Positions 1,146-63,407 of a DNA stretch of 64,000 nucleotides are shown in pieces; position 1 is the first letter of the stretch, and every line of letters starts with the position of its first letter. The DNA lies in the NCBI RefSeq assembly GCF_964204865.1, contig NC_135252.1, forward strand, positions 16,988,001 to 17,052,000. The letters run 5' to 3'. The stretch is from Styela clava (taxonomy: Eukaryota). The notes under the pieces are model-generated. The model did not search any database. It was not told where the DNA came from and saw nothing but the letters and a program-made list of their open reading frames with translations. The position numbers were made by a program, and so were the translations under genes.

Positions 1146-4100
1146 TTATCTATTGACTTTAGTAAAAAATGGATGAAGTAATGCTTCTTTTGGCGTGATT
1201 CTGATATCAGCATCCCACCTGAATGAACGGATAGAAATCTATCAAATGTAAAGGATTATGAAGGAACATATTTAACATCATGAAAGCGCACTTCGGTTTA
1301 AACTTGGTATACTAATAGAGTTGCACTTAGATATTTATTTTCATCTTCCACGGTGAAATGGTAAAATACTTACTCCAAACATTCTGAAATTAAATCGAAC
1401 AGCAGAGGATCAATATCTCTCAAAACATAATCAAGCGGTCTCTTTCCGGGTATGCGACGGAACCATGTCCTGGTTGCATAGGAGATTGCTCCTGCCAACA
1501 TAAGGCATTGCATTAAAACTGCTAATTTGTGTTGTGTCTGTAGAGATGATATACATTTCAAAAGATATCAACAAGATGTAAAATAGGAACTGTGCTTTGA
1601 TAAACAGCGAAATTGAACGTCTACGTTAATTTGTTGTCAGATGGTGCGTGGCAATAATTTTTACAAGTCAGCAATGTTAAATTGTCAGATCTTACCACAA
1701 GCAATTTTAACCAGATTGGTAGCCAGAGCTGGTTAATCTGAAACCCCCTTGTCGGTTTGAAGTTTGTGACTGATCAATTAGAATAGACTGGTCACAGCTT
1801 TCTGAGCTGATTTGTATTACTCGGAAATTTGCTGATCTAGCTGTAATGTTGGATATCTAGTTCTATGTCGTACAACAATTTGAAAACTATATGTTCATTC
1901 ACCATTCACAACTGAGGTAAAAATACAAATAATCAAACGCTACATACTTGCATATATTTCTTTTGCTTGTGAAATGATATATGCGGGCGGAAGACCAATA
2001 ACTTCCATCATTGCTGCAAACTGATCCACCTCGTCTCTACCAATAAATAATGGAGTGCCAAGAAAAAGTTGAGCCATTATCACGCCTAAACTGAACATGT
2101 CGGATTGTGATGATACAGGTAAGTTTAATAAGCTCTCCGGTGATCTGCAATACAATGGTTGGAAAACGACTCCTTCCGGACAGCGGTAGTGGAAATCTGG
2201 AATTCAATACAATTCAAATCATCAAATGCTGTTCTCATATCTTTGTTTATATAAATCTTAATGGAGGATGCATTGGGGGTTTAGTTCGGTGGAGACGCCC
2301 GGTAGAAAACTTTTGACAGTTATAATCTATGGCGTTTGTCTTACATATATATATTTTTTTATATATAATTTTTCTACCGAGCCGTAAGTGTTGTTTTGGA
2401 TACTACACGAGGTTGAAAAGCACAAAAAGTAGAATAACGCAAAGTCTTAACAAATGAAGTGATGATCAAAACGATACGATCAAAAAAGAATATTTCTTAC
2501 CTTCCGCATGGGGAACACAACTCAGGTCAAAATCTCCAACTTTTAGTAGTTGGCCTTCACTCTGATCATTTTTTTCATAAAGAAACATTATATTTTGCTG
2601 TAAACAAACGACAGTCAAGTTGGGAAAGCATTTGTATAGAACGAATAGTGAAGTATAGTAAAAAATGGAAAATAACATTTGTAATCTTGTTTAAAATTTG
2701 AATCATCAATCTTGAAATTTATTTCTAAAATTTTTATTAATAAAATATTTCGACAGCCCAAAAAAGTTTCATTTGACTATTTATTGATTATATTATCTTT
2801 CAAATAAGCAATATATTTAAGTTACCAGTTTTAAATCTGAGTGGAAAATGTTGAGTTCACTCAAGTAATACATTGCGTGCATGATGTCGCTTGAAAAACG
2901 TCGTAATAAATCTAGACTTTCTACCGGACGATTGGAATAAATATCATGTAGTGAATCTCTAAACGGATAATAATTCATCTAGATTATGAAATTTATTTCG
3001 ATTTCTGCCATAAAAAGTCGCGAACAAACAAGAGTGAAAATCCGGAAAAAGGGAGGGAACAAAGTAAAATTTGAAAAGTAAAAAGCACTTTCTCTGTCAT
3101 CGACACAAAAACGATAACACACCACATGGATGAATATTTACAAAATCCACGAATTAATTAAGCCCTTCAATTTCTATACGTTTCAAGGAAATATTTTCAA
3201 ATGATTTTATACTCCTCTGAAAAATTAGGCAGTAACAATATATATATAGAGAAATTTCACATTACCCCAATAATTCTTGAACGATACAATAATGATTTCG
3301 GAAATAAATTGTATCAAACATCCGTGAAAAATAATTTTTGTTGGTTGCGTTCGACCCTATATATTTCATTATACCCAGTTCTCTCATGTAAAGATCTTTA
3401 CCCCTGTAAAACAAGGCGAATCCATTGAATGGAATCCTGGAGTACACTGGACTAATATCGCAGAATAGACGTAGCATGTGTCCACTACCTTGGTCAGGTG
3501 GTAGCGATTTAGAACTGCTATCATTGATTATATCGAATATACTCATCATATTACTCTTCCAAGTATTTTGGAATTGGAAAGATGAAGCCAATTCACACTT
3601 AGATAATTCTCGATTTTAATTGCATGCGGGCAAAGAATTTAACAATAGAATCTAGTTCTTTGATGCACCCAAGAACCGTCTTAAGACAAATTCTGATTCA
3701 TGAACGACCTGAAAAGAGTCGTTTTCACGAACTTGAGGAATTGCTTTATACAATTGCTGCAAACTAGTAGAATTTATTATAAATGAATACGGTATATCAA
3801 TTCGTTAGGCCATACGCGTCAGCGCTACATTTTGTCATTAGTTGCCAATTGGGGTATTGATTTTTAGTTTGACTTAAGGCCGGCTGCTATAAAAAAAAAT
3901 TCATTATCGAAATATTAAAACTTTTTCCTTACAATTGATGACTCATCGGGCTACGCGAACCACTACCTATGTTGTTCTCTTTTCCTGATATAAGAGAGCA
4001 AAGGGCAACATATACAAATTTAATTCTTGCTAGCGGACAATAAATCTACATGGGTGGTCGGTCACAGGTTAGTGCGTCTGACAATAAAAAATTGTATCGA

Positions 4101-5812
4101 ATATACCCAATTTCTTCAATACCACAATGTTTTGTCATGTTTTATGCGTAGCATTATACCTTGTAAAACACACCATATGTTTGTAAAAAAAATTAACCAT
4201 TACCGTGCTGTTGTATTGACCAATATTTTAATCGCAAGCAATTCATTATTTGAATGATCCAATACTTTCACGGTTGTACCTCCGTTGCCCATTCCAAGAT
4301 TCTTTAATATTTGATAACGATATGCGATGTGATCGTTCAAAACCTATTGAAAAGAATGGATCATAGCATTGAAACTGCATCTCTTATTCAAAATAATGAT
4401 ATATATTATTGCACAATCAATCACATATTTTCTGAGTATAGCATAAGTAACTATGATATAGATCTAACCACTTTATATTGTCCTTTATATCTTCCTGACT
4501 CAATATCAAATCCGTAATTGTTATCAGCCTCTTGGTGAACTTCTGTTTTGTTTGCACCTTCTCCTACGTACCAAATCTTTTCATATTTCATGATTTCTTT
4601 TTTCTCCCATGGAGTTAGTTCATCTCCAAATATTAGTAGTGCATCTAGCTCAGAGTAATAATTGAAAAAAATGTGGAAAGTCGCTCAAAATTTTTACATG
4701 CATATAGATACAATGGATAGAAGATATTAGCTGCACTAATGGTTTACGTTTATCAATTTTTCCCAAATTTTGAAATGTCTTATTTATCAAATACTTTTTA
4801 CAATGTGAAAAATAAAAAGTTGCAACGACAACTCTTTTATGTCGACCATATTACTCATATTGTGATCATTGAAATAAAACATAAAATTCGCAATAGTTTA
4901 ATTATAAATTTCTTACTAACCTTCTGGGGTAAGGGGAAATGTTTGCGATCGATTTGAATGAATAATCTCATCGTCAACTTCCATGCCTTTCTGATCTGTA
5001 AATATTTTTATATACTTAAATAAACTTCAAGCCTATATCTTTGTTTCGGTTGGTTGACATTTAATTGAAATCAGAAATATATACATATATAACGTAGGCA
5101 AGTTTGATAGTAAACGATACCGAAATGAGGAATTGTTCTCATTTTTGTAACATTGATCATAATCTGGAATTTGAAATTTGAAAACGATTGGTCTATTAGT
5201 AGCAAAGAAAAAGATTTGCAACAATAACAGCAACAATAACAATAACAACAATAACAATAACAATAACAGCAACAACATCAATTTAGAAAAACGCTACAAA
5301 GGTCCACCTTCTGTTCAATAAAAATTACCAATGGTCTTGTTTCGCTCTTCATCATTATCCAAAAAGTTGTTTTCCGACTTATCCTCGAAAAATGAGTCAG
5401 TGGCTGCAAAATGCGGATTATTCTCAATGCCTGGAATGTTCAATTGGCGATTGGGGCTTTTGACAACGATGACGTCATAATCTCCCTGTCTAAATTTGTA
5501 TTGTTTGTCAAATTTGGTTTTAACTTTTCTGTCACAAAACTTGTCACTTATCTGAGTATATTCTTCTACATCTAATCTCACTTTTCCAAGGTCAAGATTC
5601 TCATCCGAACTCAAAATTTCGTTTTGTGTTGTTTTTTGCATACCCGCCATCCAAAAGTGTCCAACTTGATTTAAAAATGCATTTTTTGTTTCAGTACAAA
5701 TAGATTCTTCACCGTTTGTTGTTTCATACATTGTAAAATAACTCGCAATGGAGACGAAAATACAAAACATCAGAGCATAGCGGATTTTTGTTTTCACATG
5801 CCAACAATACAT
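1146..5812 (-). CDS. Signal-anchored class II DYRK-like protein kinase, paralog 1 (DFD variant), about 560-584 aa
   Basis: Phase-compatible GT-AG exons: 5812-5329 (MYCWHVKTKIRYALMFCIFVSIASYFTMY + stem), optional 5192-5121, 4995-4921 (..FPLTPE), 4644-4469 (DALLIFGDELTPWEKKEIMKYEKIWYVGEGANKT..NNYGFD..GQYKV; NAPA/DH-like), 4343-4204 (DHIAYRYQILKNLGMGNGG..LAIK), 3403-3266 (MREL..FRNHYCIVQELLG), 2958-2826 (HSDLKL), 2597-2501 (QNIM..KVGDFDLSCVP), 2196-1948 (..RCPEGVVFQPLYCRSPE..DMFSLG), 1491-1374 (DPLLFDLISECLE), 1218-1146 (WDADIRITPKEALLHPFFTKVNR*). Motifs match the DYRK2-type pattern DHxAYRYE / FRNHxC / DFGxSC / CLEWDP. Confidence 0.88.
5218..5280 (+). repeat. (AAC/AAT)n trinucleotide microsatellite in first intron of paralog 1
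   Basis: gcaacaataacagcaacaataacaataacaac.. tract; it produces the spurious poly-Leu ORF 5033-5281. Confidence 0.85.
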
Positions 5813-9655: not shown

Positions 9656-12600
9656 TTAATTTATTGTTAAGTATGGATGACGTAAAGCTTCTTCTGCAGT
9701 AATTCTCACTTTTGGATCCCACCTAGGACAAGAAAAGAAAGCGACTTGAAGAATAACTGGTACTCCTGAAGTATGTGCATCAAGATGTCGCACAACCTGA
9801 ACCTTAACCTGGTACATAACCTGATTCTTAACCTGGTACACAACCTGAGTTCAGGTTGTGCGCCATTTTGGTTCGCATACTTCAGGAGGTCCGAATAACG
9901 AATACAATTTTTTTTCAGGTAGTTCAAGAGAAAAGAGATTTTATATATTAACAGAAATAAAAGTGAAATACCATCAACAGCATATAATACCAAAACGATA
10001 CTAGAGTCACCTTGCGTCTAATAAAATACTCACTTAAGACACCGTGTTATTAAATCAATCAGCAGTGGGTTAAGTCCTTCCAGTAGTTCGTTTAGATTTC
10101 TGAGATAAGGATTCTGATGGAATCCGTTCAATATTGTAAAATCTAAAGCCGCTGTTGAATAAAAAGATAATTAGCTTGAAGTGAGGTGACTTATAATTTA
10201 TCTGTTGCTAATGACCCTTCGTAATATTATTTCGATAATGAACACATTGAATGACACAGGTGATGTCTGTTTACCCTTTGTATGAAGGCCAGCTATCGGA
10301 CCGAGTTTAATTTTTTGTCAAAAGTGTAGTTACTAGTAAGCAATATAAAATGGGAGGATTATTTTTTTTTTTTTTTTATGGCGGAGTTGGGTTAAGGCCA
10401 AATACCCGAGCTTGGTGAATAATGTAACTAATAAATAGGGGCATGCCAAACTTTTCCGCTGCCCAAAACTAGGTTATGATAATTAGGCCCATTATACCTA
10501 ATTTCAAATATAATTCGGGGAATAAACAAATTATAGATGTTGTCATACATGAGAATAAATAAATTAATGGTAAATTAAGACTGAAATGCTTGTATTATTA
10601 ATTAAACCATCGAACTAAGCAACAAACTCACGTGTATAAGAGCAAATTCATTTATATGTTGCCCGGGGCCGCTGCCCGCATCTACGGCCCTCCCTAACAA
10701 AGCTCAAAAACAGTTTTCAGAAACGGACGCTCACCAGCGAAAACCTCTCTTCTTTGCGAAATATCAATTAGATGTGCAGGTGGAAATCCAAGCACTTGCA
10801 TCATCGCGGCCAGTTGTGCAACCTCGTTGTTTCCCATGAAAGGTGGAAAGCCAATGATGAACTCAACTAGTAGTACACCAACGCTGAATATGTCGCATTT
10901 GGTAGTTACAGGCAAACATAAAATACTTTCTGGAGATCGATAGAATCTTGGTTGGAGATAGTAATCCCCACATTTGTGATCTGTGAATAGACAATGAGTA
11001 TAGAAACAATGACAAACATTTTGTTTAATAGGACTTGATGTTACGTCCTGAAATAGTGTATCTAATTTTAACTAATTAGATTCAGTGACGATACAAATGA
11101 AAATTTATAGCAAAATAATTATTCCTGCATAAGATTTTCGTTTAAAAAACATTTAACATGAGCTACAACTTGTGAACATCAAATTATACTATATTACCGT
11201 ATATATATTTAAGTATTTATTTGCAATTAAATTATGTATTCGATTGTCCTATCAAAATGTAAGTGTTAGGAAATTATCATTTCTGGATTAACCGCATTTT
11301 TAAAAATAACTTTTACAATTATCAGTTTTTTTTTATTTTTACACAAACCAAAGGGATTAAAATACCAATTTGACCATTAAACGTAAATAACTTGGTTTTA
11401 GCATTTTAATCACTATAACAAAAAGCAAGTAGTAATTGCCGTAACGTGGAAATTACCGTACATAATACAATTACTTTACTACTAAACCATCCCAAAAACT
11501 GACCTATTTCTTTACCAAATGCCAGCGCATTTTTTAGAGCTGCTCGTAGGCACACATAAAATAGGGCCTTATATCCAGCGAATTACATGAGACCCGATAT
11601 GGGTACAGGTAGAGGATAATAACAAGAGCCAGAATTTTGAAATATAAAATAAATTCGTCCTTACATTTTAGTTCAAGTACAAACCCACGATTAAAGTAGC
11701 ATTGCGTACACGCAGGAGTAACGCGGAACTATGGAAGTTTGGGACCCTCTGTGGCCACATAGGCCTCTGTAGTAGGCTAAAACCAGCCATGTTGAAAGGT
11801 TTCCCAGCTTTTGATGTACACTGTTCAGTTTATTACCTGTGGAACCGGGAATACAACTCATTCCAAAGTCAACAAGTTTTAAAAGTTGCCCTTCGCTTTG
11901 ATTAGTTTTACCGCGAATATACATGATGTTTTCCTGAAATGAAAAATATGTATTATTATTTTCGGTGCTCCCGAAGTATGCGAACCAAGATGGCGGACAT
12001 CGGAACGTAACATGGGTAACAGGTTAGGGTTAAGCGATATTTTTTTCCAATTTTCCTTATTTTAGTCCCATTATCAGTTCGAAGACTAGCCAAGAGCCTC
12101 CCGTAGTATTTATACCTAACGGCTAACATTATGGCCTAACCCTAACCTAGTACACATATTACATTCCGATGTCCGCCATCTTGGTTCGCATACTTCGGGA
12201 TCCCCTTATTTTCTATATAAGGGCGCAATACCAGGCAAAGTATAATTCAATCCCCTCTTTAATGCTCCTTTTTAAGCCCAATTGAGATCAATATTTACCG
12301 GTTTGACATCTGAATGTAGAATATTGAGGTTGTGTAGGTAGTATAACCCGTGAAAAGTATCATTCGTATATCGACGCATTACATCAGCATCCTCGATAGC
12401 ACCAAGACCAATTGAAGGCCTGTGAAAATTTGACGTGGTTAGAATTTTCCCAAATAGCCTACTCGCGTTTACTCTTAGTTTGAGTAGTTTAAATGTGTGC
12501 ATAAATAAGTATTATTGTAGTAATAAAGGACTAAAGAATACAAAACACAAAGCAATATTCCTTCCCGAGCATGACAAAATTCTTTCGTCGAGTGGAATTC

Positions 12601-15549
12601 CTACCCGGTTGGGAAACGCGAGTCTAACGAACAATTAATTTATCAGTTTTGAGGGTTGGTCAGTCAGTCAGTCAAGAAAAAAAAACGAAGAAACGTGAGT
12701 TAGGCAACTTTTTCAAGCTTGCAATTTGAGCGGTGAGATTTTGAGATAGTCAACTTCTCTCGACATTCTAAACTACAAATTTTTATTATAATATTCAGTT
12801 TGTTGGTGTAATACCCTCTTATTAGACCAAATATGCTACATTCACTCTGCATGACCCCTTTACAACTTTTAAAATAAATAAGTAGAGATAGTCCGTGCAT
12901 TCCACCAAATACTGAAAAATTCTGTTAAGTGTCTAAGTCAGTTCCCACATGCCCACATTTTTTATGATTCAAGGATGTTTCCTAAAACAATAAATGATTT
13001 CGATGTTTTTACCCCATCAGCTCCAATACTAGACACCAATGATTGCGAAATCGAAAGTAGTCAATCAAATGTGTGAAGTAGTCAAGATCTGTTGCATTTG
13101 CCTCGATGAATTTCATGATTTCAAGCTCTCGATGAAAGTAGATTTCGCTTCTATTATAGTAGAAATACATAAATATTATGGTCAAGGAAATCTAGAGAAT
13201 GATAGAATATCAAAATTAAATTATCATTTGGAAACATCTGGTGCATTTTAATGAGTTTATCGCCTACATTTTTGCATCAAATACGACTTGGCTCATATAG
13301 TTGGGCCGAATAATGTGAAAGAGTGAATTTTTCTGACTTTTTTTTTAACGGACGTCAATGGGGCAGCAATTGTTAATAACAAATGATACAATTATTTTCT
13401 GTCTGATATGTCTGAACGTGCCATTTCAATTTGATCTTGTTTCGTTTATTACGGCTGTGTTTGACCTAAATATTCGGTGAATAATTATATACTCGTACAG
13501 AGTGACCCAAAAAATACAATCAATAAATATTTTGATTACTTCTACAAAAATATAAGAATATTTATTTAACACTTGAATTATTTTTTGTTTGTATATAATC
13601 GTGTATGCAAAGGTTTCAGTGACCTGGGATGCTTTGCACAAAACTTATGTTCCTTCTAGGATATGGTTCCAAATGGATGGGTTTTGTTTTTTGTGTTACC
13701 TTGTATATGAAAGTCAACTCACTTCATATTACCAGTCACAATTTTCAATGCAACGCTTTCATTATTAGAGTGATCAATCGCTTCCACCACAATTCCTTGC
13801 AATCCCATCCCAAGTTCTCTAACTATCTCATATCTGTATGCGATGTGATCTCGAATTGCCTTGTGCAAAAAAGTTTTATTCAGATTAGAATTCATAAACT
13901 GGCGAATAAAATACCGTAACAACTAAAGACTCTGTTTTAGATGAACTTTGATTGTGCAGGTCGAATAGACAAACGAAATCACCATGCTGTAATCTGATAA
14001 GATGCATGTTTTTTTACATTCAGATTTATATGTAATAATCACGTTAGGATGTAGAAAATGTTATTGTTTTAGAAATAATTGAGTTCTCACCAATTTATAA
14101 TGTCCTTTCTTAGCTCCAGATGAATAATCAAATCCATAGTTATCATAGGCAGTTGGATGACTTTGTGTTTTGTTCGCATCGAGACCGAGGTACCAAATAT
14201 TAGAGTAACTGAAAATTTCATTTTGTTCCCATGGACTCAGATACTTTCCAAACGTTCTGATGGCATCTGTATCACATTAAGTATATGCATAAACGCATTG
14301 GACCTTTAAATAATTTGTGTTTTCATGTTTGAAACTGAATCATTTGAATGAACTAGTAATTTCGAAGAGAAAATTATGATTTAATTGGGAACGAAATGCA
14401 AGAGGACGACGAGAGTTGAAGATATTTGATTGAAATTGCAAATATTGAGTTATCGAGTACAAACCTGTTGGTGTAATTGGAAATTTAACTTCCATTTCTT
14501 CACGTTGTAAAGTCGAAGTCTTGCCTTCATCATTATATATTCTGAAAATATTTTCGTCGAATAGAGGAATTTCAAATTCGTTTAAGGTCTCCTTATTTCG
14601 TCTTATATTCCTAAAAATCAATTTAAAAAAATAAATCATTGTTTTTTTCTGTATCAATAAATATTGTTGTTATAGATGTATTAAAAGTTTGTAGCATACG
14701 TTTTTCATAATAAAATAAAAAATAATTTCCATATCTTATTCTTAATATACTTTATAGTTTTTCTTCTTGGTTTTATGAATAAATTTTAAAACCATGGAAT
14801 TTTCCCAAATAAAACAAATTTTTCTTACTGGATTTCTTCAACGCTTTTATCGTCGCGCTTCATTATTTTTTTATTGGATTGGCTGTTGCTTGTCAAGATA
14901 TCTAGAAGGTGAATCATCAAGTTAAAAATGCTGCATAAAATCTCAACCCTTGGTAGAAGAAGATATTATTGGGTATTTTTTATAATCTTAAGCCCTCGTT
15001 AAAATATTTTATAATTTAATACAATCTGTTTCATTTTAGGAGTTCACTTACTGTAAATCGAGGCATTTATTTGCAAGCTATTTTAAACTTGGCAGAAGAA
15101 CCCCAATCAAAAATAAGTAATGTTTAAAATTGGATCCGTCCCAATTTTCCACTCAGTTGAGACCGCGAGCTAAGTTAAACAATGTATCTCGATTCTTTCC
15201 TGCAAATCTAAGCACACGCATAAATACTGTATTACTTACTTCTGTTTTCAGCGATAGAGTCCTCACTCCATTGGTTAAAAGGTATTTGCTTATTTACATC
15301 AAAATTATCTTTTTTGCCATCTTGTATCGAACTCGGAATTTTTGAGGTTTGCTCATTATCAAATTCATTGCTATTATCTCTTTCATTCACAATACGATGT
15401 GTATTGTCAGAATCGACAAAATATCTTATGTTCTTGTCATATTTCAATATATGGATATTTATATTCAAAAGTCCGTTCAAAGCAATCACGAGAATTGTAC
15501 AAATTACTATTGCACATAAAAATCTTCTTGATCGCCGAAAACTAAGCAT
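9656..15549 (-). CDS. Signal-anchored class II DYRK-like protein kinase, paralog 2, about 542 aa
   Basis: Exons: 15549-15240 (MLSFRRSRRFLCAIVICTILVIALNGLL + stem), 14901-14829, 14610-14465 (..FPITPT), 14266-14091 (DAIRTFGKYLSPWEQNEIFSYSNIWYLGLDANKT..NYGFD), 13859-13723 (DHIAYRYEIVRELGMGLQG..VALK), 13150-13013 (HRELE..FRNHWCLVLELMG), 12419-12299 (HSDVKP), 11933-11837 (ENIM..NQSEGQLLKLVDFGMSCIP), 10980-10735 (DHKCGDYYLQPRFYRSPE), 10151-10034, 9722-9656 (WDPKVRITAEEALRHPYLTIN*). All junctions are GT-AG and in phase. Confidence 0.88.
9763..9888. mobile_element. Palindromic MITE family A (intron of paralog 2)
   Basis: TIR ctcctgaagtatgtgcatcaagatg / cattttggttcgcatacttcaggag; same family as 11968-12200, 34126-34300 and 37387-37610. 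Confidence 0.7.
11968..12200. mobile_element. Palindromic MITE family A (intron of paralog 2)
   Basis: Long TIRs tcccgaagtatgcgaaccaagatggcggacatcggaa / ttccgatgtccgccatcttggttcgcatacttcggga with internal ggttagggtt / cctaaccctaacc motifs. Confidence 0.8.
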
Positions 15550-16199: not shown

Positions 16200-16380
16200 A
16201 CGCTGCCCTATCTCCCTAACCTTTATATCACCGACCCACTGCCCCATCGCTTCCAACTTTCCTATCCTAGACCCACTGCCCCATCTCCACAGCCTTTCTA
16301 TCACCTACCCACTGTCCTATCCGCAACCCACCCCGCAAAAACCCTCAACCCGCCGCCTACCTCACACTCTTATCCTACCC
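16200..16380 (+). repeat. Second copy of the C-rich subrepeat block of the foldback element
   Basis: cctatccgcaacccac..aaaaccctcaacccgccgcctacctcacactcttatccta is near-identical to 17520-17581. Confidence 0.75.
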
Positions 16381-53633: not shown

Positions 53634-56600
53634 ATGTTGTGCTTCCGTGCAAAAATCAAAGTTCGTTATACATTACTGTTGTTCTCGTTTTTTGCCTTTT
53701 CATTTTATGGCATTGCAAGAGTTCGGACATTTTTACATCACACAGTAGCCCAGGAAACAAATAATGACGTAGCTCCTGACGTCATTCGTCGCTCTTTAAC
53801 CGCAAGGTGGCACGACAGTAGGGAACTTCTCAATAAAATTTCTAAAACGAGGAATAAGTTTTTAGCTGGAGAGAGAACACCTCCGAAATGGGACTCAGAC
53901 GTAGATGGGCAACTAGTCATCGAAGAAGACAATTGGCCGCCAACAAAGTCTGACCCTGTGACCCAAAAGGACTTAATAGCAAACGAAAATGAAATTATTG
54001 AAAATAGTGATATAGATATTCCCGACTCTTGGGATGAGAATTCTTTAATAGACGATAAAAATGAAGCCGAATTGCGTGAAACTACTGTTCCTAATCCTGA
54101 AGAAGACTTTGGGGGAAATAATTACGATGATGCTGATGTTCAAGATTCAAAAAAACAAAATACGTACAATAAAGGTGAGTTAATATCATCGGTTGTTTTT
54201 GACGATAATTTACTGAGAAATCAGTTTTTTAATATTCCAGTTTTCTGTGGCATAGAAGTGTCAATCATTACTTTTTTCATTATTTAGATTTTATGGATGA
54301 TATAGAAGCTCAATCTAGGGAAGCTTATCCAGGAATTGAAGAAAGGTAAATATGTTTTATGTATACGATTATGTTTATTCCAATTTCAACAAACTTTCGT
54401 TTAATAAAATCGTTATAATATAATAATAAAATCACGTATCATAAAACTACGCATCATTATAACGAGTTGTGTCTTTGCAATTAAACGAGCTGACACATTG
54501 GAGTAGGGTTTCCCAAACTGGGTTTCTTTATTGAGCCACGGAGTAGTGCAAAAACGTTTAATGTGTATCATTTGTGATGACTACAATAATTTAAAATAAA
54601 TTGACTGTGCTTTTATTGTGTTGCCTTGGTTTGCTGGCTATATTATTGTTAAACTTGGTTTATAAAATAATTGATGAAAACGCGCTAAAAACATAGATAT
54701 ATATAGAAGCGCCACAGGTGGTGAGACTTGTTTGAGAGTTGGCCACTGATCATGAAACTTCAACATGAAAAGAGTGTTAGGCCACATTGTGATGTAATAA
54801 TCAATGTATAATGGGCCTATGGCCAACAATACAAAATCAAAGCATAATCATTTGATATGAAGACGAGAGGTCAGAAGGTTATCATCAAACAGTTTAAAAC
54901 AGAATATTGTGTTTATGATATACCCAAATAAACAGGATATCTTCAACTTTATGGGGTAAGAGATAGAACTGAGACCGTGAAACCGCTGTTTCCAATTGTA
55001 ACGAGATTTTCCAGTTTAATGGATGCATGAGTGATGTTCTCGCGAGATTTGAAATCTATTTATGGAGTTCAGTTCAGAACGCACAGTTCAAAAAACATGA
55101 AAACATATTTTCTCAAATGACTATATTATACAAAAGTTGTCTTTATTAACTTTCGACCTATTTAAAATGGATTTTTTATAACTTGGCTTTTATATCTTTA
55201 TAACTAGCCCATAGGGACAATTAGCACGTTTTTGGGTTTCGCGGTTTTATTTTCAAAATCCTGAACTTCGGTAATCAGTTTGACATTCACATTTATTCCC
55301 CACGGAATATTCAACATTTAAACATGCTGACAAACAGTGTGTTAAATATACTGCAAATATACTGTTATAAATCCGCTTCAAAGGACATCGGGGCAGCCGG
55401 TTGTATGTAGTCTACGTATGAGTGAACCTGTTGCTTTTTGAAAGATATGTACGATCTTTATGGTTGAATTTGAGCGCCAACATAGTGGAGTTTTTGGCAT
55501 CCGCCCGGTTTAATTCAATTAACATATCTTCCAAAGTCAATTTATCTGGGTATTTTCAACAGTGTTTGTAAGTTGAGTCTCTTCTTGTTTCTGATCACAG
55601 ACTAAACAATTTCATTGAAAAGCCGATAATTCGACCTCATTATGCGAACTGTCTGGGAATACTCAGGCATCAGGAGATCCCTGCTGCTTGTGGTGTCTCA
55701 CCGCATTCATTATAAAAATCATCGACGACATGTGTGGCCAATTTTGACAGTAATATCGAAATTCAGTGATTTATGTCCGATGTAACTTGAAAAAAAAAGA
55801 TAAAATTAAATAAATTTACCAGACTGTAGCTTTGCAAACCTAATTCAATGTTAATTAATTTTTCATATGTTTAAAATTTCTCAAACTCGAAGCAAATGTG
55901 AAAAATTTAGGCTGAATATACTAACCGGACGTACGTAACACAAATATCTTTAATAAAAACTACTGAAAAAGTTGAACCATTTACTTTGCACTTAACAGCC
56001 CTACAGTGGAATCACGCTACGGCGTATAAGATTTTGCCGCATTTTTTACCTGTCATACTTGAACCTAGTGTGCTATATATTGATTAAGTCCCTGATTTTT
56101 TTACTGTGGAATTCCACTAAATTTACACTACTATATTCCACACATAAGTTCAATTATTCATTTTCTCTGACAGCAGACAGAATAATCACAAAAAAGATGA
56201 TCCCACGCAGAATTTTCAACTCAACCTGAAACTTGACACGAGACATGATGACGAACAGCCGCAGTATGATAACGGAGACGTTCATGCTGAAACCATCGAG
56301 GAATACGGTGAAAACGAGGAAGAAGATGAACCAGAAATTGCTGAAGACGCTGAAGAATACGACGATAATAAACCCGAAGAAAATAATCGAGAAATTGCCA
56401 CGGAAAAAATACCTGAAAATAGAAACGCAAATCAAAAATTTAATAAAACAATTTTCCAGCCAAATGACAGCAAAATCAAGTATTACATATCTGAAAACTT
56501 GGAATCGTTCACTCGTTCACAAATTAATGGAAGCAGAATTGCGAATTTTGGAAGAGCAAATGATTTTCCCATGACTCCAGAAGGTGAGTCACGAATTCGT

Positions 56601-59600
56601 TAATTTCATTTGAATTTCAGATATTTCTCTCGTTGCCTGAAATCACGGTATTCGATACTTTTAATCGTCACCGTTCATTTATTCAAAACACATCACGAAA
56701 TCTGGGGCCGAAACACGATATTCATGTATCAAATTGAGAAATTAATATAATTAAATATCGTAAAATATTGCACCCTTCTGCAATAAATAAATCGGTCTTA
56801 AATTTTAATGAATAAACAAAAGTATAATATTCCCTGCTTTTAAAATATTAATACGATTACCGGTAATTTTGAAAATATCTAGAAATTTTCGGGCGTCCCA
56901 ACAAAAATTCTTAAGAAAATCTTTTTTTATCGGCACTTTCAAATTTGATGAGCTATAATGTCGATGAAATCACAATTCAGTTATTATATATATTTCAATG
57001 TTGCATTAGCTTTTGGAATGATTTCTTTTCTCAGCAACCATTGTGCTGTACGTAAGATTTTATGGAACGTCATAAATAATTTCGGTCATTCGAGTATGAC
57101 GTCACAATGTAAGAATGTGTTATTTTGCAAGTATTCGGAACGCTATTTCACCACTGTAAACCAAATCACTACTTTTATACCATTAAATCGATGCTTTCGC
57201 ACTTAAATTAGTGGTCTTTTCAACAAAAATACAGTATTTCAAATGTCTTTCAGAGGAATTATAGTCTATTAGAAAATTGTGTTATTTATAGAATTTTGTC
57301 TGAAACCAGAATGTCGTTAATTAAATCATCATTTCTTAAATTAAACATCCCCGGTACAAGAATATATAGAATCTCCACCCAATTTTCTAAAATATACCCA
57401 ACTTATATGAATTTAGTATTTAATTAATTAAGTTATTTAAGGAAGTAGGAAATAATATTAAATATTATAATTAGGGAACTCTAATTATTGTTAAAACTGA
57501 TTTATATAACTTCAGTTTTGTCCAAGTACGATTTGCCTTAAAACTAGTATATAAAGAGTAATGTATTACTGTCCGTGCCTTTTAATAGTAGTCATGATTA
57601 CTATTAAAATTTAGTTAGTTTAGCATGTTTCATTTTATTGCAATGGGATTTAATTAATAGAAGCGGATACAATTTTGAGGATATTAGTTAATATGGTAAT
57701 TACGATGGTAATATTACAGTATTACGTATATTCCATCCTATTTAATTTAACGAATTTACAATTATCAGTTTCATAACTTATTTAGATGCGGTCAGAAAAT
57801 ATGGCGATGATCTTCCATCTTGGGAGAAATATGAGATTTTTCATTATCCAAAAATATATTATCTCGGACTTGGAGCAAACAAAACTCAAGTTCAACAAAA
57901 CATCAGCAATAATTTTGGATTCGATTTTGATGCAGGAACGGAAAAGGAAGGACATTATAAAGTGGTAAGATTTGAAATTTAAAACAAAAATGCTCAAAAT
58001 ATATATATTTAAACCGAGCGATAATACAATTATATAATACAATATATAATATAATGTATGTATAATACAATTAGATTAATCAATTAAATGTAATTTCTTT
58101 GTTTTAATCACTAAATATTATTTAAAATCTAAAAATGTTACGGTATCAATTTTTGAATATTTTTCAAAATTTGGCTTCTCAAAAAGTTAGTACAAAGCTA
58201 TTTACCATAATTTCAAAAGTTTAGTGTATATAAAATACCAATACCTTGGTGTCTTGACTATAGGAATTCTAATATGGCCCACACCATATGAATTGCTCAA
58301 CTTAGTTTCATTTTCAAATTCCCATCTCAACAAGGAACCTTTTACGGTTACAGATCCATTCACCACTTATTTTTGTAACAAAAGAGATTTCATATGTACT
58401 ACACACAATACTAGAGATTAGGTGTTTTTGGAACGTTAGTCTAAGGTACTTGTTTCTATGGTATTCACGAAAAAGAATTTCAATTGGCTTAAATGATTAA
58501 TATAATGAAAAAAAAAACATTGATGGCGCATTTAAAGTAAGAGGGGGAATTTTGTTTATTGATTTTACTTCATCGTCATCAAAGTGACCGAGTTTTGTTT
58601 ACCACATTTTTGTATTTCAGGTTATTGGCGATCACATAGGTTATCGATATGAAATATTAAAGTATGTTGATGCTGGTACATTCGGTGCTGTTGTCCTGGC
58701 AAGAGATTGGTCAAACCCGATTGCCAGAGACGTAGCTCTGAAGATCATGCATTTAGATGAGTATGTTCAGTTTAATTTCATTTTATATGAGACTTTGAAA
58801 CAGCGAGATCGACACAAACCAAAAAATTAAATTAATAAACAAATGAATTTAGACCTTATTAAGTGTATTCCTCGACGTACTTTTAAATATGTTGAAACTT
58901 ATCCGAGAATCTTAAACAACCTGCAACCCGTAGTAAAATTTATGCGCTTAATATTTATTTTCTTGTTGAAAATTAACGCAAACATTGCAACTTCGCCATT
59001 TAGCATGATAGGGGGGAAATTGAAGCTTGACAAACTTCTGAAATAAAATTGTTGACAATAACTCTGCATGGTACAACTAAATTTCTCATTTTCTTCAAAG
59101 TTGATAATTGTTGATTACCAAATATCATTTATATAAACAACATGTTTTTTTTTCGAGTTTCCATTTTGTGATACGAAACGCGGTGGTTTGACTAGATTCA
59201 AAGCTACTATGCCAACATTCTTGAGATATGCTGTCATGCCACTGTAATTCATTTACTGCTCACCGTGGATTCTAGTGCCTTCCAATTGACTCTAATTTGA
59301 TTTCATTCCCCCGCGTTCAATTGACCCCTCTATTTAATTTTTTTTTTCATTTTTAGAGAAGAAAAATATTTTCTGAGAGAAGTCAGAATGATGGAATACT
59401 TGGAAAAATATGCATCAAATCATAATTATTTTTCGAGAATGATCGCGACGTTTCAGTTCCGTAATCATTGGTGCATTGTCATGGAATTACTCGGGTAAAA
59501 TGAAATTATTTACTGACTACTCTATGCAAGTATTAACTTTTTATCAATCTTGCCTCGCAAATTGCTGATGTAATGAATAAAAGAAACAAGAACAATAAAA

Positions 59601-62600
59601 AGTTATGTGACTCTTGATTTAACTTTCCTTCAGTCACATAACAAAACATTGAATCCATCGCTCAGTCAGTTCGCATGTCAGAATTTCATTTTAAAAAATG
59701 ACTTCAATCAAAATAATTCAAGGTGGGATTCACCTCGACTCCAATGGTCCATTAATAATTTACCTAGCCCTACAGAGCACCTAAATCGCTGAAATTCCCT
59801 TTGCAAGTTCCAAATTGCAAGCTTACAGTTAAATAAGAGTTTCTTTATCCCAAACTAAACCAGAGACCAATATGTTCTCACAATATTTGTTGATACCTAC
59901 ATATTTTGAGATATTTTTGAAAAGTGAAATATCGTGTTGATACACGATTTTCTCTTTTACTCCTGTTTTGCACAGGCGATACCAGCCATCGCCTGTACTT
60001 TGAGCCTTAACCCCGTATTTGGCCCGTTTTCTAACAGTAGTCGCGCAGACTTTTTCGTGCTATGGACCATTTCAATTATTTGCCCACAACTTGGGAAATC
60101 ATTTAATTATAACAAGCCTGATTTATCAAGTCGCCCTTGATTTGTCGTCGTGGTCAAGTTAAACCACCATTTTGCTATTGCTCAGCGAATCTCTGACTAC
60201 ATCAGGCATGCGTGCCATTCAAATAGCCATATCTTATAATTGCTGGTTTCTCATTTTATTACTCTCCATAACATATAATAATAATAATATACAGTAATGA
60301 AATTATGTTATAACTTTTTTCCCACGCAGGCACGCCGTTGATCGTCACTACTTGGGACACCCAGTACGGAATCCTCATATATTGAGACAATTCTCCAGCG
60401 ATATCATAAAAGCAATGTATTATCTGAACGAACTCAATATTGTGCACGGAGATTTAAAACCGGTAATTTAATCTTATTCTTTATATCTACGTGAATAGGC
60501 GTAGTTGGTCCCAAATAGATTAAAATTAAATCTGTGAATACATCCAATACCTGAAGACACGTTCTTTCTGTAAATCCGTAAAAAACTGAAATGAAGTTAT
60601 TAGACTTCGTTCAATTTTATTCAATTTGACAAGGATTGTATTAGTTTTATAGAGAGCTTAGAAAATTCCAATCTTATTTTAGCAAGATCCAACTTGAATC
60701 AAATCAGTATCGAAATATTTGAAAGATTTAAAAACCGTAGTTAGAATCACCCCTATTACTCAAACTCAAACTCGATTTTGATACTGTTGGTCTCGACCCT
60801 TGGGGTCCACTTTATAAAAACGAAATTTCGTTTGACTTGTTTCAAGCTAATTAATCGATAATCAATCGATAATTAATCAATCAATTCTATAATCTCATAA
60901 ACTAGATTGATTTATTCATTTAAATTTAACTTTTCTCATTTTCAATACCACGACATGATTTTTTTCCCTGTTTATCGCTATTTTTCGAGTTTCTTGAATT
61001 TGCAATTTCTTCAATCATTACTCAATATTTCCTCTTTCCTTTATTCCAGGACAACATCATGTACATATATGGGAAGAATAATGAAAGTAAAGGACAACTT
61101 CTCAAAGTAGCAGATTTTGGAATAAGTTGTATCCCTGGCTCGGAAGGTAACAGTGAAATTGATTTTTTTATTTTTAGCAAATGTTTCACAGTTCCTGTTA
61201 ATTGATACTGAAAAATCAATATGATAGATAGTGATACAGATGGATACGAAAATAGTAGTCAGTGTTCAACAATGCAAATGCCAAGAGTTGTTCGTAGAAT
61301 TCATCAACCCAACACTATCTAGACGTCTTTATTGTAAAATTAGATGAAAGAGACATTGGCATAAACATAGTCTTACATTGGTTGGGTACTAATAAGCGAT
61401 TCGCATGGGAATAAGCGCCGAAAATAAGCGAAGCGCTCGAGATTCACATATGGGACATATGTGGACAATGTACCTTTAACAATGCCACTTAATACAACAT
61501 TCTATGCCAACATTTTACATATACACCATTTTTGCAATTAAAAATTGATGAAATTTTTAGAATGCACAGTCAGCGATAACAAACAATTTTGCTGTTTAAT
61601 TGTTGTAATATAAACAAACAGCAACATAAATAGCCTTTGCAAAAGTGTGATGCCCAACAGCTAATTTGAAACACTGTCTAGTTGAACGTGATTCTTACTG
61701 CGCTCTAGTTCTTCATTAAACAACGGTAAACGCTTGCCAGAATCCGAAATATGAAACATTTGTGATGTAATATTCAATCCGAAATTGAAAGATAAAAACT
61801 TAATCACGTCTAAACGCTAATGAAACTACGCTAAAAAAAACTACAAAGGTTAAACATATGGCGTTGAGTCATTAATTCGAGGTAAAGAAGATTGTGTTCA
61901 ATATATTTCCCTTAAATTCACTCAAGTTCTTGATGCTCAACGACCAAGCCACTATAATTCCTTAATAAACCTAAAAATTTGACTGAAATTAATGAAGTTC
62001 CGAGTGCAGCTTTTGCGTTGTATAAAATTTATTGAATGGCTAACACTAGCACACAATAAAAATAGAACGCTGAAATTTTTTGAATAAATTGTAATTGATT
62101 AGAGCAGGATACAGCAATGCTTATACAATCAGGTCAATCACTAAATCTTCTCAGAAAAAGTGCACGTAAAAAGGCGATAAAGAACCAGATGACTTCTGGT
62201 GTTTCAAACACGTGGTGTGAAATTGGTGTGAAACAAATAATTCAATAATTGTTACGCCACTTTGGCTTGTCGTGTAACAAACGCGTAATAGTAATAATAT
62301 GAATTGTGATTCGGGCTTTTTTCTGGGTTAAGATAGATACAATAATCTGCATATCAAGTGAAGTTCATACAATTGAGATAAGTGGCACAAACTTTTTGAG
62401 ACACATCATTGTTTCCTGTTTTTGGTGTTAGTAAATGAATCACAAATTTGACCATGTTTTCATTTTGTACAGATTATCACTGCCCAGAGTATTACATCCA
62501 AACTCGTTATTACCGAGCACCAGAGGTTATTCTGAGTTTACCAATCACTCCCCAGTGTGACATGTTCAGTGTCGGAGTGATTTTGGCAGAGTTTTGGTTG

Positions 62601-63407
62601 GGTGTGCCACCTTTCTTCGGGGAAACCGAGGCCGATCAGCTGGCAGCAATGATGGAAGTAATCGGCCTTCCACCAACATACATGATTGCAAAATCTCGGA
62701 GAAAGAAAATCTATGCAAGTAAGTAGGCGTTTATTTTGCCTGCGCATTTCATTGTGATACCAAATTTGGATCTTTAGGGAACAATGCAGACGAACCACGG
62801 TCCTTCTTAGCCAATGACGCGCTTCAAAATTTTAAGAACGGGTTCTTCTTCATTACATTGAACTCACTAACAACAGGTTCCCTCATTCCAGGAAACTATG
62901 TCGAATTAAGGCCCTAAACACAATAATGGGTTCGTACGAACCCTTGTGAAACCCCCGAGTCCCATCTCTGCTTCAAGCTAATGATAACAACAATCATTTG
63001 CGACCAATGTCTTCATTCTAAATTTAACTTTAATATTTTTGTTGTCTATACGCCTCTTTTGTTTGAAAATCAATTTTCTTTACTGATTTCATTTAACGAT
63101 ATATACGCAGTCTTTATGAAAGAACTGTGTAAAGCCAGCGCACAGTTACCCATTTTTCATAGCGAGTTCGATTTATGAAATATGAGAAACTGTAATTGCT
63201 AGCTTTAGTCAGGTGAATAAAGGCATTCATTAAATTTTGGAGCTACCAACAGTTTTATATATCTTATAATTTGGTATTTACGTTAACAGAAGCAATATGT
63301 TACACAACTGAAAACGGATTTCACCGTAAACCTTATCGCAAGCCTTTGACCAAAGTCCTGAACGGAATGGATCCAATGTTGTTTGATTTAATTGCAAGAT
63401 GTCTGGA
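53634..63407 (+). CDS. Signal-anchored class II DYRK-like protein kinase, paralog 5 (acidic stem; 3' partial, final WDP exon beyond the window)
   Basis: Exons: 53634-54174 (MLCFRAKIKVRYTLLLFSFFAFSFYGIA + stem), 54288-54345, 56174-56583 (acidic stem ..EEYGENEEEDEPEIAEDAEEYDD..FPMTPE), 57786-57964 (DAVRKYGDDLPSWEKYEIFHYPKIYYLGLGANKT..), 58621-58760 (DHIGYRYEILKYVDAGTFG..VALK), 59357-59494 (LREV..FRNHWCIVMELLG), 60330-60462 (HGDLKP), 61050-61146 (DNIM..NESKGQLLKVADFGISCIP), 62473-62718 (DYHCPEYYIQTRYYRAPE), 63290-63407 (DPMLFDLIARCLE). Confidence 0.9.

What the first reader, a model, noticed from the sequence alone, without database searches (positions are those of the whole stretch)
1948..62718. 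Rewired cysteines: HCD Cys lost, new conserved Cys pair clamps the activation loop
Seen in sequence: catalytic loops read HSD, HSD, HMD, HAD and HGD, never HCD. Activation segments all have two Cys: SCVPHAEDFHYRC, SCIPGSTDHKC, SCIPDSK(x)LKC, SCIPGAETSSHYFC, SCIPGSEDYHC. The second Cys is kept despite variable spacing and an intervening intron. Established knowledge: DYRKs have HCD and DFGSSC, and those two cysteines have been seen disulfide-linked in DYRK1A structures. Inference: in an oxidising lumen the SC cysteine now pairs with the new Cys, structuring the activation loop by disulfide rather than by phosphorylation.
Basis: partly seen in the sequence, partly recalled or inferred. Interest (0 to 1): 0.78.

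Follow-up and report, generated by a model that had tools for sequence, protein, structure and literature searches.

The report
Rewired cysteines in sea-squirt DYRK kinases
Five neighbouring sea-squirt kinase genes of the DYRK type have lost the family's usual catalytic-loop cysteine, gained a new invariant cysteine in the activation loop and carry a membrane anchor, which fits an enzyme rebuilt for the oxidising secretory pathway, though the proposed disulfide bond is not yet shown.

Summary
The window (Styela clava by the names) carries five paralogous DYRK2-like kinase genes. Their catalytic loops read HSD, HSD, HMD, HAD and HGD. Each activation segment is split by a phase-1 intron. It holds the ancestral DFG+3 Cys plus a new Cys 8-11 residues further on.

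The pattern is family-wide:
- 17 of 17 members (Styela, Ciona, Clavelina, unnamed assemblies) have both Cys, and 0 of 18 have HCD.
- The new Cys is the only family-specific column among 38 invariant ones.
- Only 3 of 158 other DYRK/HIPK/CLK-like proteins have any Cys in that loop.

The family also lost four further ancestral Cys. It has half the Cys and 2.6 times the sequon density of canonical DYRK2. It carries a basic motif plus a membrane span whose charge bias puts the kinase domain outside the cytosol.

A lumen-adapted DYRK with a Cys pair in its activation segment is therefore the best reading. The disulfide itself is not shown, because no tool gave coordinates. "Rather than by phosphorylation" is only partly right: the loop Tyr is kept in 12 of 17 and lost only in a Styela subclade (g1, g3, g4).

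The scan had already noted this cluster's membrane anchor in separate first-reader notes.

The parts
1152..5812 (-). g1: DYRK2-like kinase gene. Catalytic loop HSD (x codon 2838-2840), DFD, first Cys codon 2517-2519, second Cys codon 2180-2182, extra Cys in LYCRSPE.
   Evidence: (NCBI model P0167 maps at 90-100% over 10 exons)
9659..15561 (-). g2: DYRK2-like kinase gene. HSD (x codon 12311-12313), first Cys 11853-11855, second Cys 10970-10972, loop Tyr pair YY kept.
   Evidence: (fragment P0004)
20715..27808 (-). g3: DYRK2-like kinase gene. HMD (x codon 23327-23329), DFA, first Cys 22727-22729, second Cys 22144-22146, loop Tyr replaced by HH.
   Evidence: (P0011). Spliced contigs give joints 22806|23314, 22154|22708, 21134|21912 and 20772|21017.
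30776..35975 (+). g4: DYRK2-like kinase gene. HAD (x codon 34452-34454), first Cys 35078-35080, second Cys 35266-35268, loop Tyr replaced (KT).
   Evidence: No database model of g4 was returned; the nearest is the paralog P0168 at 82-84% over three exons.
53634..63408 (+). g5: DYRK2-like kinase gene, whose last exon lies beyond 63408. HGD (x codon 60448-60450), first Cys 61128-61130, second Cys 62481-62483, loop YY kept.
   Evidence: (P0002 = XP_039267506)
2180..2519 (-). g1 activation-segment Cys pair, with the phase-1 intron between exons 5 and 6. Spliced reading: SCVPHAEDFHYRC.
   Evidence: (G|GTAAG ... CCAG|AT)
10970..11855 (-). g2 Cys pair across the intron: SCIPGSTDHKC.
   Evidence: P0004 reads the same
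22144..22729 (-). g3 Cys pair across the intron: SCIPDSKSELKC.
   Evidence: P0011
35078..35268 (+). g4 Cys pair across the intron: SCIPGAETSSHYFC.
61128..62483 (+). g5 Cys pair across the intron: SCIPGSEDYHC.
   Evidence: P0002
5330..5812 (-). g1 first exon: basic motif plus hydrophobic span (signal anchor).
   Evidence: (P0167 residues 1-158)
15235..15561 (-). g2 first exon: MLSFRRSRR followed by a hydrophobic span.
27290..27808 (-). g3 first exon: MVRLRRRFK followed by a hydrophobic span.
   Evidence: AF2 helix 2-44
30776..31288 (+). g4 first exon: MICSRAKIKVR followed by a hydrophobic span.
53634..54173 (+). g5 first exon: MLCFRAKIKVR followed by a hydrophobic span, then an acidic, disordered stem.
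   Evidence: AF2 helix 2-41, stem pLDDT below 50

Best explanation
These genes belong to a tunicate family of class II DYRK-derived kinases. An N-terminal signal anchor (one span, or a two-span hairpin in other species) places the kinase domain in the lumen of the secretory pathway or outside the cell.

In that oxidising setting, the ancestral HCD cysteine lies within bonding range of the DFG+3 cysteine and would have formed a bond to the catalytic loop. It was removed, and so were four other conserved free cysteines.

A new cysteine arose in an enlarged activation loop, 4-6 residues before the [IVLF]-Q that follows the DYRK tyrosine. It pairs with the retained DFG+3 cysteine, closing a loop of 6-17 residues. 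This ties the activation segment to strand beta-9 in an active-like shape.

The tyrosine was kept at first and became dispensable later in one Styela subclade.

Shown: the sequence pattern, its invariance, the DYRK2 fold, the splicing of g3, the membrane span and its charge bias.

Inferred: the topology, the disulfide and its stabilising role.
For: DYRK2 origin:
- Exon 1 of g5 matches only the N-terminal region of DYRK2 and DYRK3 in the PDB: 8 of 8 matches, best E 4e-8.
- The AF2 model of P0002 is nearest to DYRK2, 5lxc_B, TM 0.87 by target, rmsd 2.2 A.
- The 16 family rows form one clade, SH-aLRT 99.

Cysteine pattern:
- DFG+3 Cys in 18 of 18 family rows, new Cys in 17 of 17, HCD in 0 of 18. 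The canonical rows have HCD and the DFG+3 Cys in 8 of 8 and no residue at all in the new-Cys column.
- Of 38 invariant family columns, only the new Cys is absent from all 7 canonical rows, at a median family identity of 39%.
- Spacing between the two Cys varies from 6 to 17 residues while both ends stay fixed.
- 3 of 158 non-family proteins have any Cys in that loop.
- Further copies in the same genome (L003, L004, L005, L007, L010, L013) keep both Cys wherever both exons are in view.

Exoplasmic adaptation:
- Four more ancestral Cys columns are lost: 0/18, 3/17, 1/17 and 0/17 in the family against 8/8, 8/8, 8/8 and 6/8 in canonical rows.
- Mean Cys per kinase region is 5.6 against 10.4, and sequons per 100 aa are 0.81 against 0.31, in 14 family and 7 canonical rows.
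- The sequon ANK[TS] is present in 12 of 17 family rows and 0 of 8 canonical rows.
- The flank before the last hydrophobic span is more positive than the flank after it in 15 of 16 proteins. The 16th is a miscall of my script.
- Two-span members have the basic motif between the spans.

Catalytic residues K, E, HxD, N and D of DFG are invariant.

AF2:
- The loop between the Cys has block pLDDT 96 in g5 and 93-97 in the Tyr-less g3.
- In the g3 model, DSSP marks C487-I488 and K496 as strand or bridge. If I488 pairs with K496, the two Cys are cross-strand neighbours. That pairing is my inference.

Precedent: PMC11964447 (passages read) reports intramolecular bonds between a DFG-proximal Cys and a T-loop Cys in MELK and AKT2.
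Against: - No distance, no mass spectrometry and no localisation data exist. The disulfide and the topology are inferences.
- The DFG+3 Cys is invariant in all 103 rows of alignment A2, cytosolic DYRKs included. Its retention therefore needs no disulfide.
- In the g5 model, DSSP shows no bridge next to the second Cys.
- Cys counts per kinase region are odd in 5 of 14 family rows, so some Cys must stay free.
- After the membrane span, several proteins also carry positive charge; P0164 has +5 before and +4 after.
- The known DFG-proximal to T-loop disulfides (AKT2, MELK, BRSK) are inhibitory redox switches, not activating clamps (PMC11964447).
- 12 of 17 members keep the loop Tyr, so phosphorylation may still be the main stabiliser.
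- The sets are small (17-18 family rows, 7-8 canonical rows), and 10 of the family rows are Styela paralogs.
Confidence: 0.42

Rival explanations
1. The two cysteines do bond, but the bond serves to cap a thiol, not to activate. The DFG+3 Cys cannot be lost for structural reasons. In an oxidising compartment a free thiol there would mispair or cause retention, so a partner Cys evolved next to it. The activation segment is still shaped by the tyrosine and by packing.
For: - The DFG+3 Cys is invariant in all 103 DYRK-like rows, so it seems indispensable on its own.
- All other exposed ancestral Cys were purged, which points to selection against free thiols.
- 12 of 17 members keep the loop Tyr.
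Against: - A Styela subclade lost the Tyr (g1, g3, g4) and the DFG glycine (g1 DFD, g3 DFA) yet keeps every catalytic residue. This suggests that something else now holds the loop.
- The rival cannot be separated from the clamp reading by sequence alone.
Confidence: 0.2
2. The kinase domain faces the cytosol, tethered to a membrane by the N-terminal span or spans. The Cys pair is then a reversible redox switch of the AKT/MELK/BRSK kind, mostly reduced and inhibitory when oxidised.
For: - Intramolecular DFG-proximal to T-loop disulfides are known redox switches in cytosolic kinases (PMC11964447, passages read).
- DYRK's own HCD/DFG+3 pair was proposed as one (PMC3677093).
- No localisation data exist.
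- Positive charges also follow the span in some members.
Against: - The charge bias puts the basic motif in the cytosol in 15 of 16 proteins, and in two-span members it lies between the spans.
- A cytosolic kinase has no reason to lose five conserved Cys columns, halve its Cys content and gain sequons.
- The long acidic disordered stem after the span resembles the layout of type II Golgi enzymes. That resemblance is recalled, not tested.
Confidence: 0.12
3. The new Cys has a partner other than the DFG+3 Cys. Candidates are an intermolecular disulfide (covalent dimer or substrate trap), a bond to another Cys of the domain, or a ligand or metal site.
For: - T-loop Cys form intermolecular bonds in MELK and MARK2 crystals (PMC11964447, passage read).
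- Cys counts are odd in 5 of 14 rows.
- g1 and its relative P0005 have a third Cys in the same segment, in LYCRSPE.
Against: - No other Cys column is invariant in the family. The next best are 13 of 17 and 12 of 17, and both are ancestral core positions.
- No conserved His or Cys cluster that would make a metal site is seen around it.
Confidence: 0.13
4. The pattern is phylogenetic inertia: a neutral Cys fixed in the family's ancestor and not yet lost.
For: - The family is one clade on a long stem.
- Many rows are Styela paralogs.
Against: - Median identity within the family is 39%.
- All 37 other invariant columns are kinase or DYRK core residues shared by at least 5 of 7 canonical rows, except P703 (1 of 7).
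- The residues around the Cys and the loop length vary freely.
Confidence: 0.03

Closest known systems
Class II DYRKs (DYRK2/DYRK3/DYRK4)
   Same: - The N-terminal DH/NAPA-like region matches only DYRK2 and DYRK3 in the PDB.
- The model's nearest solved folds are DYRK2 chains.
- The DFG+3 Cys, the DHxxYRYE box and the catalytic residues are kept.
- NCBI names the proteins 'DYRK2/3/4-like'.
   Different: - No HCD.
- An activation loop enlarged by 4 or more residues, with a new invariant Cys.
- Four more conserved Cys lost.
- An N-terminal membrane span and an acidic stem.
- Identity to canonical DYRK2 is only 38-39%.
- YxY is reduced to a single Tyr, or to none in g1, g3 and g4.
DYRK1A C286-C312 (HCD Cys to DFG+3 Cys) pair
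   Same: It uses the same DFG+3 cysteine. The idea that a Cys pair couples the start of the activation segment to a neighbouring element comes from PMC3677093 and PMC5936063 (passages read).
   Different: The partner has moved from the catalytic loop to the activation loop itself. The DYRK1A bond is a conditional, crystal-observed bond in a cytosolic or nuclear enzyme.
AKT2, MELK and BRSK1/2 intramolecular activation-segment disulfides
   Same: A Cys close to DFG bonded to a Cys further along the activation segment. This shows that such a bond is sterically possible in the protein-kinase fold (PMC11964447, passages read).
   Different: There the Cys sit at DFG+2 and T-loop +1/+2 (or in CPE), downstream of the phosphosite. 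The bonds are reversible and inhibitory, in cytosolic kinases. Here the Cys are at DFG+3 and upstream of the Tyr position, and the bond is proposed to be constitutive.
Rhoptry kinases (ROPK) of coccidia
   Same: A lineage-specific expansion of ordinary protein kinases routed through the secretory pathway, with a family-conserved disulfide (PMC3682881, passages read).
   Different: - The ROPK bond links the end of helix F to the G-H loop, not the activation segment.
- ROPKs are not CMGC kinases.
- They have signal peptides, not signal anchors.
Secretory-pathway kinases FAM20C, VLK and relatives
   Same: Predicted type II or signal-anchored layout, with the catalytic domain in the lumen. The layout of FAM20C and VLK is recalled. 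One search listed FAM20C reviews, of which I saw only the listing and abstracts.
   Different: Those are atypical, distant kinase folds. This family is a canonical CMGC kinase. Two paper searches found no lumenal CMGC kinase.
HIPKs
   Same: HAD instead of HCD, NIML after the catalytic loop, and a Cys 4 residues before LQSRYYRAPE, seen in P0009. HIPK2 chains are among the PDB matches of exon 6. The label HIPK for P0009 is mine, from motifs.
   Different: HIPKs have DFGSAS (no DFG+3 Cys), no DH/NAPA-like exon 1 match (one search returned only DYRK2 and DYRK3) and no membrane span. The tree could not place the family relative to HIPK because of long branches.

Membership tests
DYRK class II (DYRK2/3/4) | DH box / NAPA-type N-terminal extension packed on the kinase domain | tested here: met
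   Exon 1 of g5 matches only DYRK2 and DYRK3 N-terminal regions. Foldseek aligns about 400 columns to DYRK2 chains that include this region.
DYRK class II (DYRK2/3/4) | HCD in the catalytic loop | tested here: not met
   The five genes read HSD, HSD, HMD, HAD and HGD. 0 of 18 family rows have HCD against 8 of 8 canonical rows.
DYRK class II (DYRK2/3/4) | DFGSSC: Cys at DFG+3 | tested here: met
   18 of 18 family rows. The column is invariant in 103 rows. The two Ser and the Gly vary (DFD, DFA, DFN).
DYRK class II (DYRK2/3/4) | YxY activation-loop motif with the autophosphorylated second Tyr | tested here: inconclusive
   The Tyr before [IVLF]Q is kept in g2 and g5 and in 12 of 17 family rows. 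It is lost in g1, g3 and g4. The first Tyr of YxY is never kept. Phosphorylation is not testable here.
DYRK class II (DYRK2/3/4) | Soluble cytosolic or nuclear protein | tested here: not met
   An N-terminal basic motif plus hydrophobic span is present in 16 of 16 full-length family proteins and in none of 4 canonical ones checked. This is prediction only.
Secretory-pathway (lumenal) protein kinases | Signal peptide or signal anchor that directs the catalytic domain into the lumen | tested here: met
   Hydrophobic span with positive-inside bias in 15 of 16 proteins. AF2 predicts helices 2-41 and 2-44. By sequence only.
Secretory-pathway (lumenal) protein kinases | Shown lumenal or extracellular location, glycosylation and disulfides | not testable with these tools
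   Only indirect signs are available: Cys purge, sequon gain, and the ANK[TS] sequon in 12 of 17 rows.
Kinases with an intramolecular activation-segment disulfide (AKT2/MELK type) | Cys at DFG+2 and at T-loop +1/+2 | tested here: not met
   The Cys are at DFG+3 and 4-6 residues before the [IVLF]-Q that follows the Tyr position, that is, upstream of the phosphosite.
Kinases with an intramolecular activation-segment disulfide (AKT2/MELK type) | The disulfide is observed | not testable with these tools
   Models were made, but no coordinates are given out.

The most novel reading that the evidence does not exclude
Tunicates turned a DYRK2-type kinase into a lumenal or extracellular enzyme whose activation segment is locked in the active shape by a covalent Cys-Cys staple. 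The staple takes over the job of the catalytic-loop cysteine pocket and, in one Styela subclade, also of the activation-loop phosphotyrosine. This would be the first CMGC kinase working in the secretory pathway and the first protein kinase activated, not inhibited, by an activation-loop disulfide.
Probability: 0.3. Interest if true: 0.82.

Novelty: new variant of a known kind. Interest (0 to 1): 0.62.

Why it matters
Known lumenal kinases are atypical folds. A canonical CMGC kinase adapted to the secretory pathway would widen the set of enzymes that can phosphorylate secreted and matrix proteins.

It would also show, step by step, how a cytosolic signalling enzyme is refitted for an oxidising compartment: free cysteines are purged, one is re-partnered, sequons are gained and the regulatory tyrosine is later dropped.

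For kinase biochemistry it offers a natural experiment on whether a disulfide can replace activation-loop phosphorylation. The paralogs in one gene cluster make this testable, because g2 and g5 keep the tyrosine while g1, g3 and g4 do not.

Tried and rejected
1. Reading the Cys-Cys distance. Two AF2 jobs gave confident models, but only pLDDT and DSSP strings are returned and no model file reaches the sandbox. The distance test could not be done.

2. An HIPK origin of the HxD loop and the loop Cys. I considered this because HIPK-like P0009 has HAD and a Cys 4 residues before LQ. I rejected it as the main reading because exon 1 matches only DYRK2 and DYRK3 and the fold is nearest to DYRK2. The tree leaves the deep position open because long branches meet.

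3. Pseudokinase or decay. Rejected: all exons are open, the catalytic K, E, D, N and D are invariant, and g3 is spliced in contigs of 4 runs.

4. A second conserved disulfide. No other Cys columns co-occur. The 'QC-D' Cys and the CMGC-insert Cys do not travel together. Only three non-Styela members share a CxxxC / CxxxxC pair in the beta7-beta8 insert.

5. ESM Atlas gave only generic kinase clusters.

6. Paper searches for a membrane-bound or lumenal DYRK or CMGC kinase and for Styela tunic kinases found nothing on this family. I saw listings and abstracts only. The kinome tables of tunicate genome papers could hold the family.

8. The rest of the window has no other long open frame.

Full report
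WHAT IS THERE. The window has 34% G+C and no N runs. It lies at C3:16988001-17052000 of a 377 Mb genome. [quoted passage not shown] Six-frame scans and a local comparison of open segments show five paralogous genes with the same eight core exons. Three are on the minus strand (g1, g2, g3) and two on the plus strand (g4, g5). They are 40-60% identical to each other exon by exon. Nothing else in the window has a long open frame.

THE OBSERVATION. The catalytic loops read IFHSDLK, ILHSDVK, IVHMDLK, IVHADLK and IVHGDLK. The activation segment is split by a phase-1 intron with GT..AG ends in all five genes. For g3, contigs of four runs of one study skip four introns with GT..AG ends on the gene's strand, so they are spliced transcripts even though the tool only guesses that the runs are RNA. 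They join 22708 to 22154. Between the two Cys lie 10, 8, 9, 11 and 8 residues in g1 to g5.

HOW I SEARCHED. Sequence from the window went to the search tools exon by exon. Full-length analysis rests on protein models that the tools returned.

WHAT KIND OF KINASE. Exon 6 matches DYRK1A, DYRK2, DYRK3 and HIPK2 chains. Exon 1 matches only the N-terminal region of DYRK2 (7 sequences) and DYRK3 (1 sequence). An AF2 model of g5's protein (P0002, 103-row alignment) has pLDDT above 90 over the kinase part, and its nearest solved folds are DYRK2 chains (5lxc_B, TM 0.87 by target, rmsd 2.2 A over about 400 columns). The family is therefore derived from class II DYRKs. In a quick maximum-likelihood tree, 16 family proteins form one clade (SH-aLRT 99) on a long stem. 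Its position relative to DYRK2, DYRK1-like and HIPK-like rows is not resolved, and the tool warns that long branches meet.

HOW WIDE THE PATTERN IS. The same genome holds more copies:
- Two intact genes and one truncated g2-like copy lie just upstream of the window on C3 (L007, L010, L013/L014).
- Three copies lie on C9 (L003-L005).
- The canonical DYRKs with HCD, DFGSSC and YTY are also present (L011, L012, L016).

A profile of exon 6 from ten copies, searched against 1.84 billion representatives, listed 150 proteins. Of these, 16 carry the family signature and the rest are ordinary DYRKs, HIPK-like or other kinases. A word-based search with P0002 added Ciona intestinalis (P0171), Clavelina lepadiformis (P0172) and unnamed assemblies. 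After them identity drops to 38-39% with canonical DYRK2 of insects and others.

In a MAFFT alignment of 18 family and 8 canonical rows, the counts are as follows:
- DFG+3 Cys: 18 of 18 family rows and 8 of 8 canonical rows.
- New Cys: 17 of 17 family rows that cover it, where canonical rows have a gap.
- HCD Cys: 0 of 18 family rows against 8 of 8 canonical rows. The family has G, N, S, A, T, M or R there.
- Of 38 columns invariant in the family, only the new Cys is shared by none of 7 canonical rows. One more (a Pro) is shared by 1 of 7.
- Median identity within the family is 39%.
- The number of residues between the two Cys ranges from 6 to 17.

Among 158 non-family proteins whose HxD...DFG...RxPE stretch could be parsed, 3 have any Cys in this loop: one HIPK-like and two DYRKs.

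IS THE COMPARTMENT OXIDISING? Four lines of sequence evidence agree.

(a) Membrane span. First exons of g2, g3, g4 and g5 encode a basic motif (for example MLCFRAKIKVR) followed by 15-17 uncharged hydrophobic residues. g1's first exon is found through P0167. The motif R/K-A-K-x-K-V-R is conserved in Ciona and in unnamed members, where a second hydrophobic span precedes it.

(b) Charge bias. The 12 residues before the last span are more positive than the 12 after it in 15 of 16 proteins. In the 16th (Clavelina) my script missed the second span, and the basic motif again lies before it. By the positive-inside rule (established knowledge), the kinase domain is then exoplasmic.

(c) Cysteine loss. 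Besides HCD, four other Cys columns that are conserved in canonical DYRK2 are lost in the family: 0/18, 3/17, 1/17 and 0/17. Mean Cys per kinase region is 5.6 against 10.4. That count uses 14 family rows, with the incomplete P0169, P0172, P0039 and P0034 dropped, and 7 canonical rows, with P0064 dropped.

(d) Sequons. Sequon density is 0.81 against 0.31 per 100 residues, and one sequon, ANK[TS], is present in 12 of 17 family rows and 0 of 8 canonical rows.

Several unnamed members sit on contigs only slightly longer than their open frames. I read these as transcripts that carry the span and the kinase domain together. None of this shows location.

THE DISULFIDE. What can be said is the following:
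- The two Cys are the only invariant Cys of the family.
- They flank a loop of free length.
- The loop is modelled with high confidence both in g5 (block 561-570: 96) and in the Tyr-less g3 (blocks 481-500: 97 and 93).
- In both models the first Cys sits in the beta-9 bridge beside the former HCD position.
- In the g3 model, residue K496, next to the second Cys C497, is marked as a bridge, and C487-I488 as a strand. If I488 and K496 are partners, C487 and C497 are cross-strand neighbours. That partner assignment is my inference. The g5 model shows no such mark.
- Bonds between a DFG-proximal Cys and a T-loop Cys exist in MELK and AKT2 (PMC11964447, passages read), so such a bond is sterically possible in this fold. 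Those bonds are inhibitory, however.

PHOSPHORYLATION. The residue before [IVLF]-Q, which aligns with the autophosphorylated Tyr of DYRKs (alignment), is Tyr in 12 of 17 family rows, among them g2 and g5. It is V, H, T/S or E in g1, g3, g4 and their relatives P0005 and P0168. P0167 (the g1 model), P0005, P0168 and P0011 (the g3 model) form one Styela subclade (SH-aLRT 99). In P0016 the position is ambiguous. The Cys pair therefore predates the loss of the Tyr. The same subclade also lost the DFG glycine in g1 (DFD) and g3 (DFA). This order of events fits a loop that no longer depends on the Tyr, but it also means that 'disulfide rather than phosphorylation' does not describe most members.

MECHANISM I COMMIT TO (confidence 0.42). 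The family is a signal-anchored, exoplasmic DYRK2 derivative. In canonical DYRKs the HCD Cys lies 4.2-4.4 A from the DFG+3 Cys (PMC3677093, passage read). It would bond to it in an oxidising medium, so it was removed. A new partner in the enlarged loop now bonds the DFG+3 Cys and ties the activation segment to beta-9. The Tyr became optional later.

Rivals:
- The bond only caps an indispensable thiol (0.2).
- The domain is cytosolic and the pair is a redox switch (0.12).
- The new Cys has another partner (0.13).
- The pattern is inertia (0.03).

AGAINST MY READING.
- The DFG+3 Cys is invariant in all 103 rows of A2, so its retention needs no bond.
- Cys counts are odd in 5 of 14 rows.
- Some proteins are also basic after the span.
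- HxD without Cys occurs in five non-family DYRK-like proteins that have no second Cys.
- The samples are small and rich in Styela paralogs.
- No experiment exists.

NOVELTY. Two full-text searches for a membrane-bound or lumenal DYRK or CMGC kinase and one for Styela tunic kinases returned nothing on this family (listings and abstracts seen; supplements closed). The scan's own notes had flagged the cluster's type II architecture. I rate the cysteine finding as a new variant of a known kind. It is a DYRK with a re-partnered DFG+3 cysteine, related in principle to the known activation-segment disulfides and to disulfide-bearing secreted kinases such as ROPKs (PMC3682881, passages read).

VERDICT. 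Interest is 0.62.

Noticed in passing
window 22700-22712 (g3 exon 5 donor): Two GT donors lie 3 bases apart. Spliced contigs of 4 of 4 runs use the downstream one (last exon base 22708), giving ...SKSELKC.
   Followed up: yes
window 21134-21917 (g3 intron between exons 6 and 7): One run (X4) has a contig with a different joint, 21135 to 21917, with ends TG..TA and four other letters between. The other three runs use 21134 to 21912. This is either an alternative splice or an assembly slip.
   Followed up: no
window 21380-21774: Low-depth contigs from two runs lie inside a g3 intron, each with 7 differences. This may be intronic transcription, unspliced RNA, or a repeat copy from elsewhere.
   Followed up: no
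window 2530-2538 (g1) and 22736-22744 (g3): The glycine of DFG is replaced: DFD in g1 and DFA in g3. Other family members have DFN, DFS, DYG or DYS. Loss of the hinge glycine fits an activation segment that no longer flips.
   Followed up: partly
window about 2140-2160 (g1) and L007: g1 and its upstream relative carry a third Cys in the P+1 region (LYCRSPE instead of FYRSPE).
   Followed up: no
G000 C9 paralog, protein P0166 (locus L005): One family member reads HRD in the catalytic loop, a return to the usual arginine, and still has both Cys.
   Followed up: no
proteins P0042, P0157, P0172 (Clavelina and unnamed): A CxxxC / CxxxxC pair, with sequons next to it, sits in the insert between beta-7 and beta-8. 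This may be a second local disulfide in the non-Styela branch.
   Followed up: no
C-termini of P0002, P0164, P0016, P0165, P0166, P0169: A conserved tail motif, roughly P-x-L-I-x-R-F-x-G-x-x at the very end, is found in the g5/C9 branch only. Its function is unknown.
   Followed up: no
L013/L014 = G000 C3:16984876-16985442, about 2.6 kb before the window: A truncated g2-like copy has exon 5 and the first part of exon 6, with both Cys kept, and then diverges. It is probably a pseudogene fragment.
   Followed up: partly
window 16260-16377 and 17511-17689: C-rich direct repeats of 71-91 nt, 85-96% alike, lie in the G+C-richer stretch between g2 and g3.
   Followed up: partly
proteins P0090, P0098, P0216, P0219, P0222: These non-family DYRK-like proteins read HSD or HGD yet have the ordinary YxY loop and no second Cys. 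HCD has therefore been lost more than once.
   Followed up: partly
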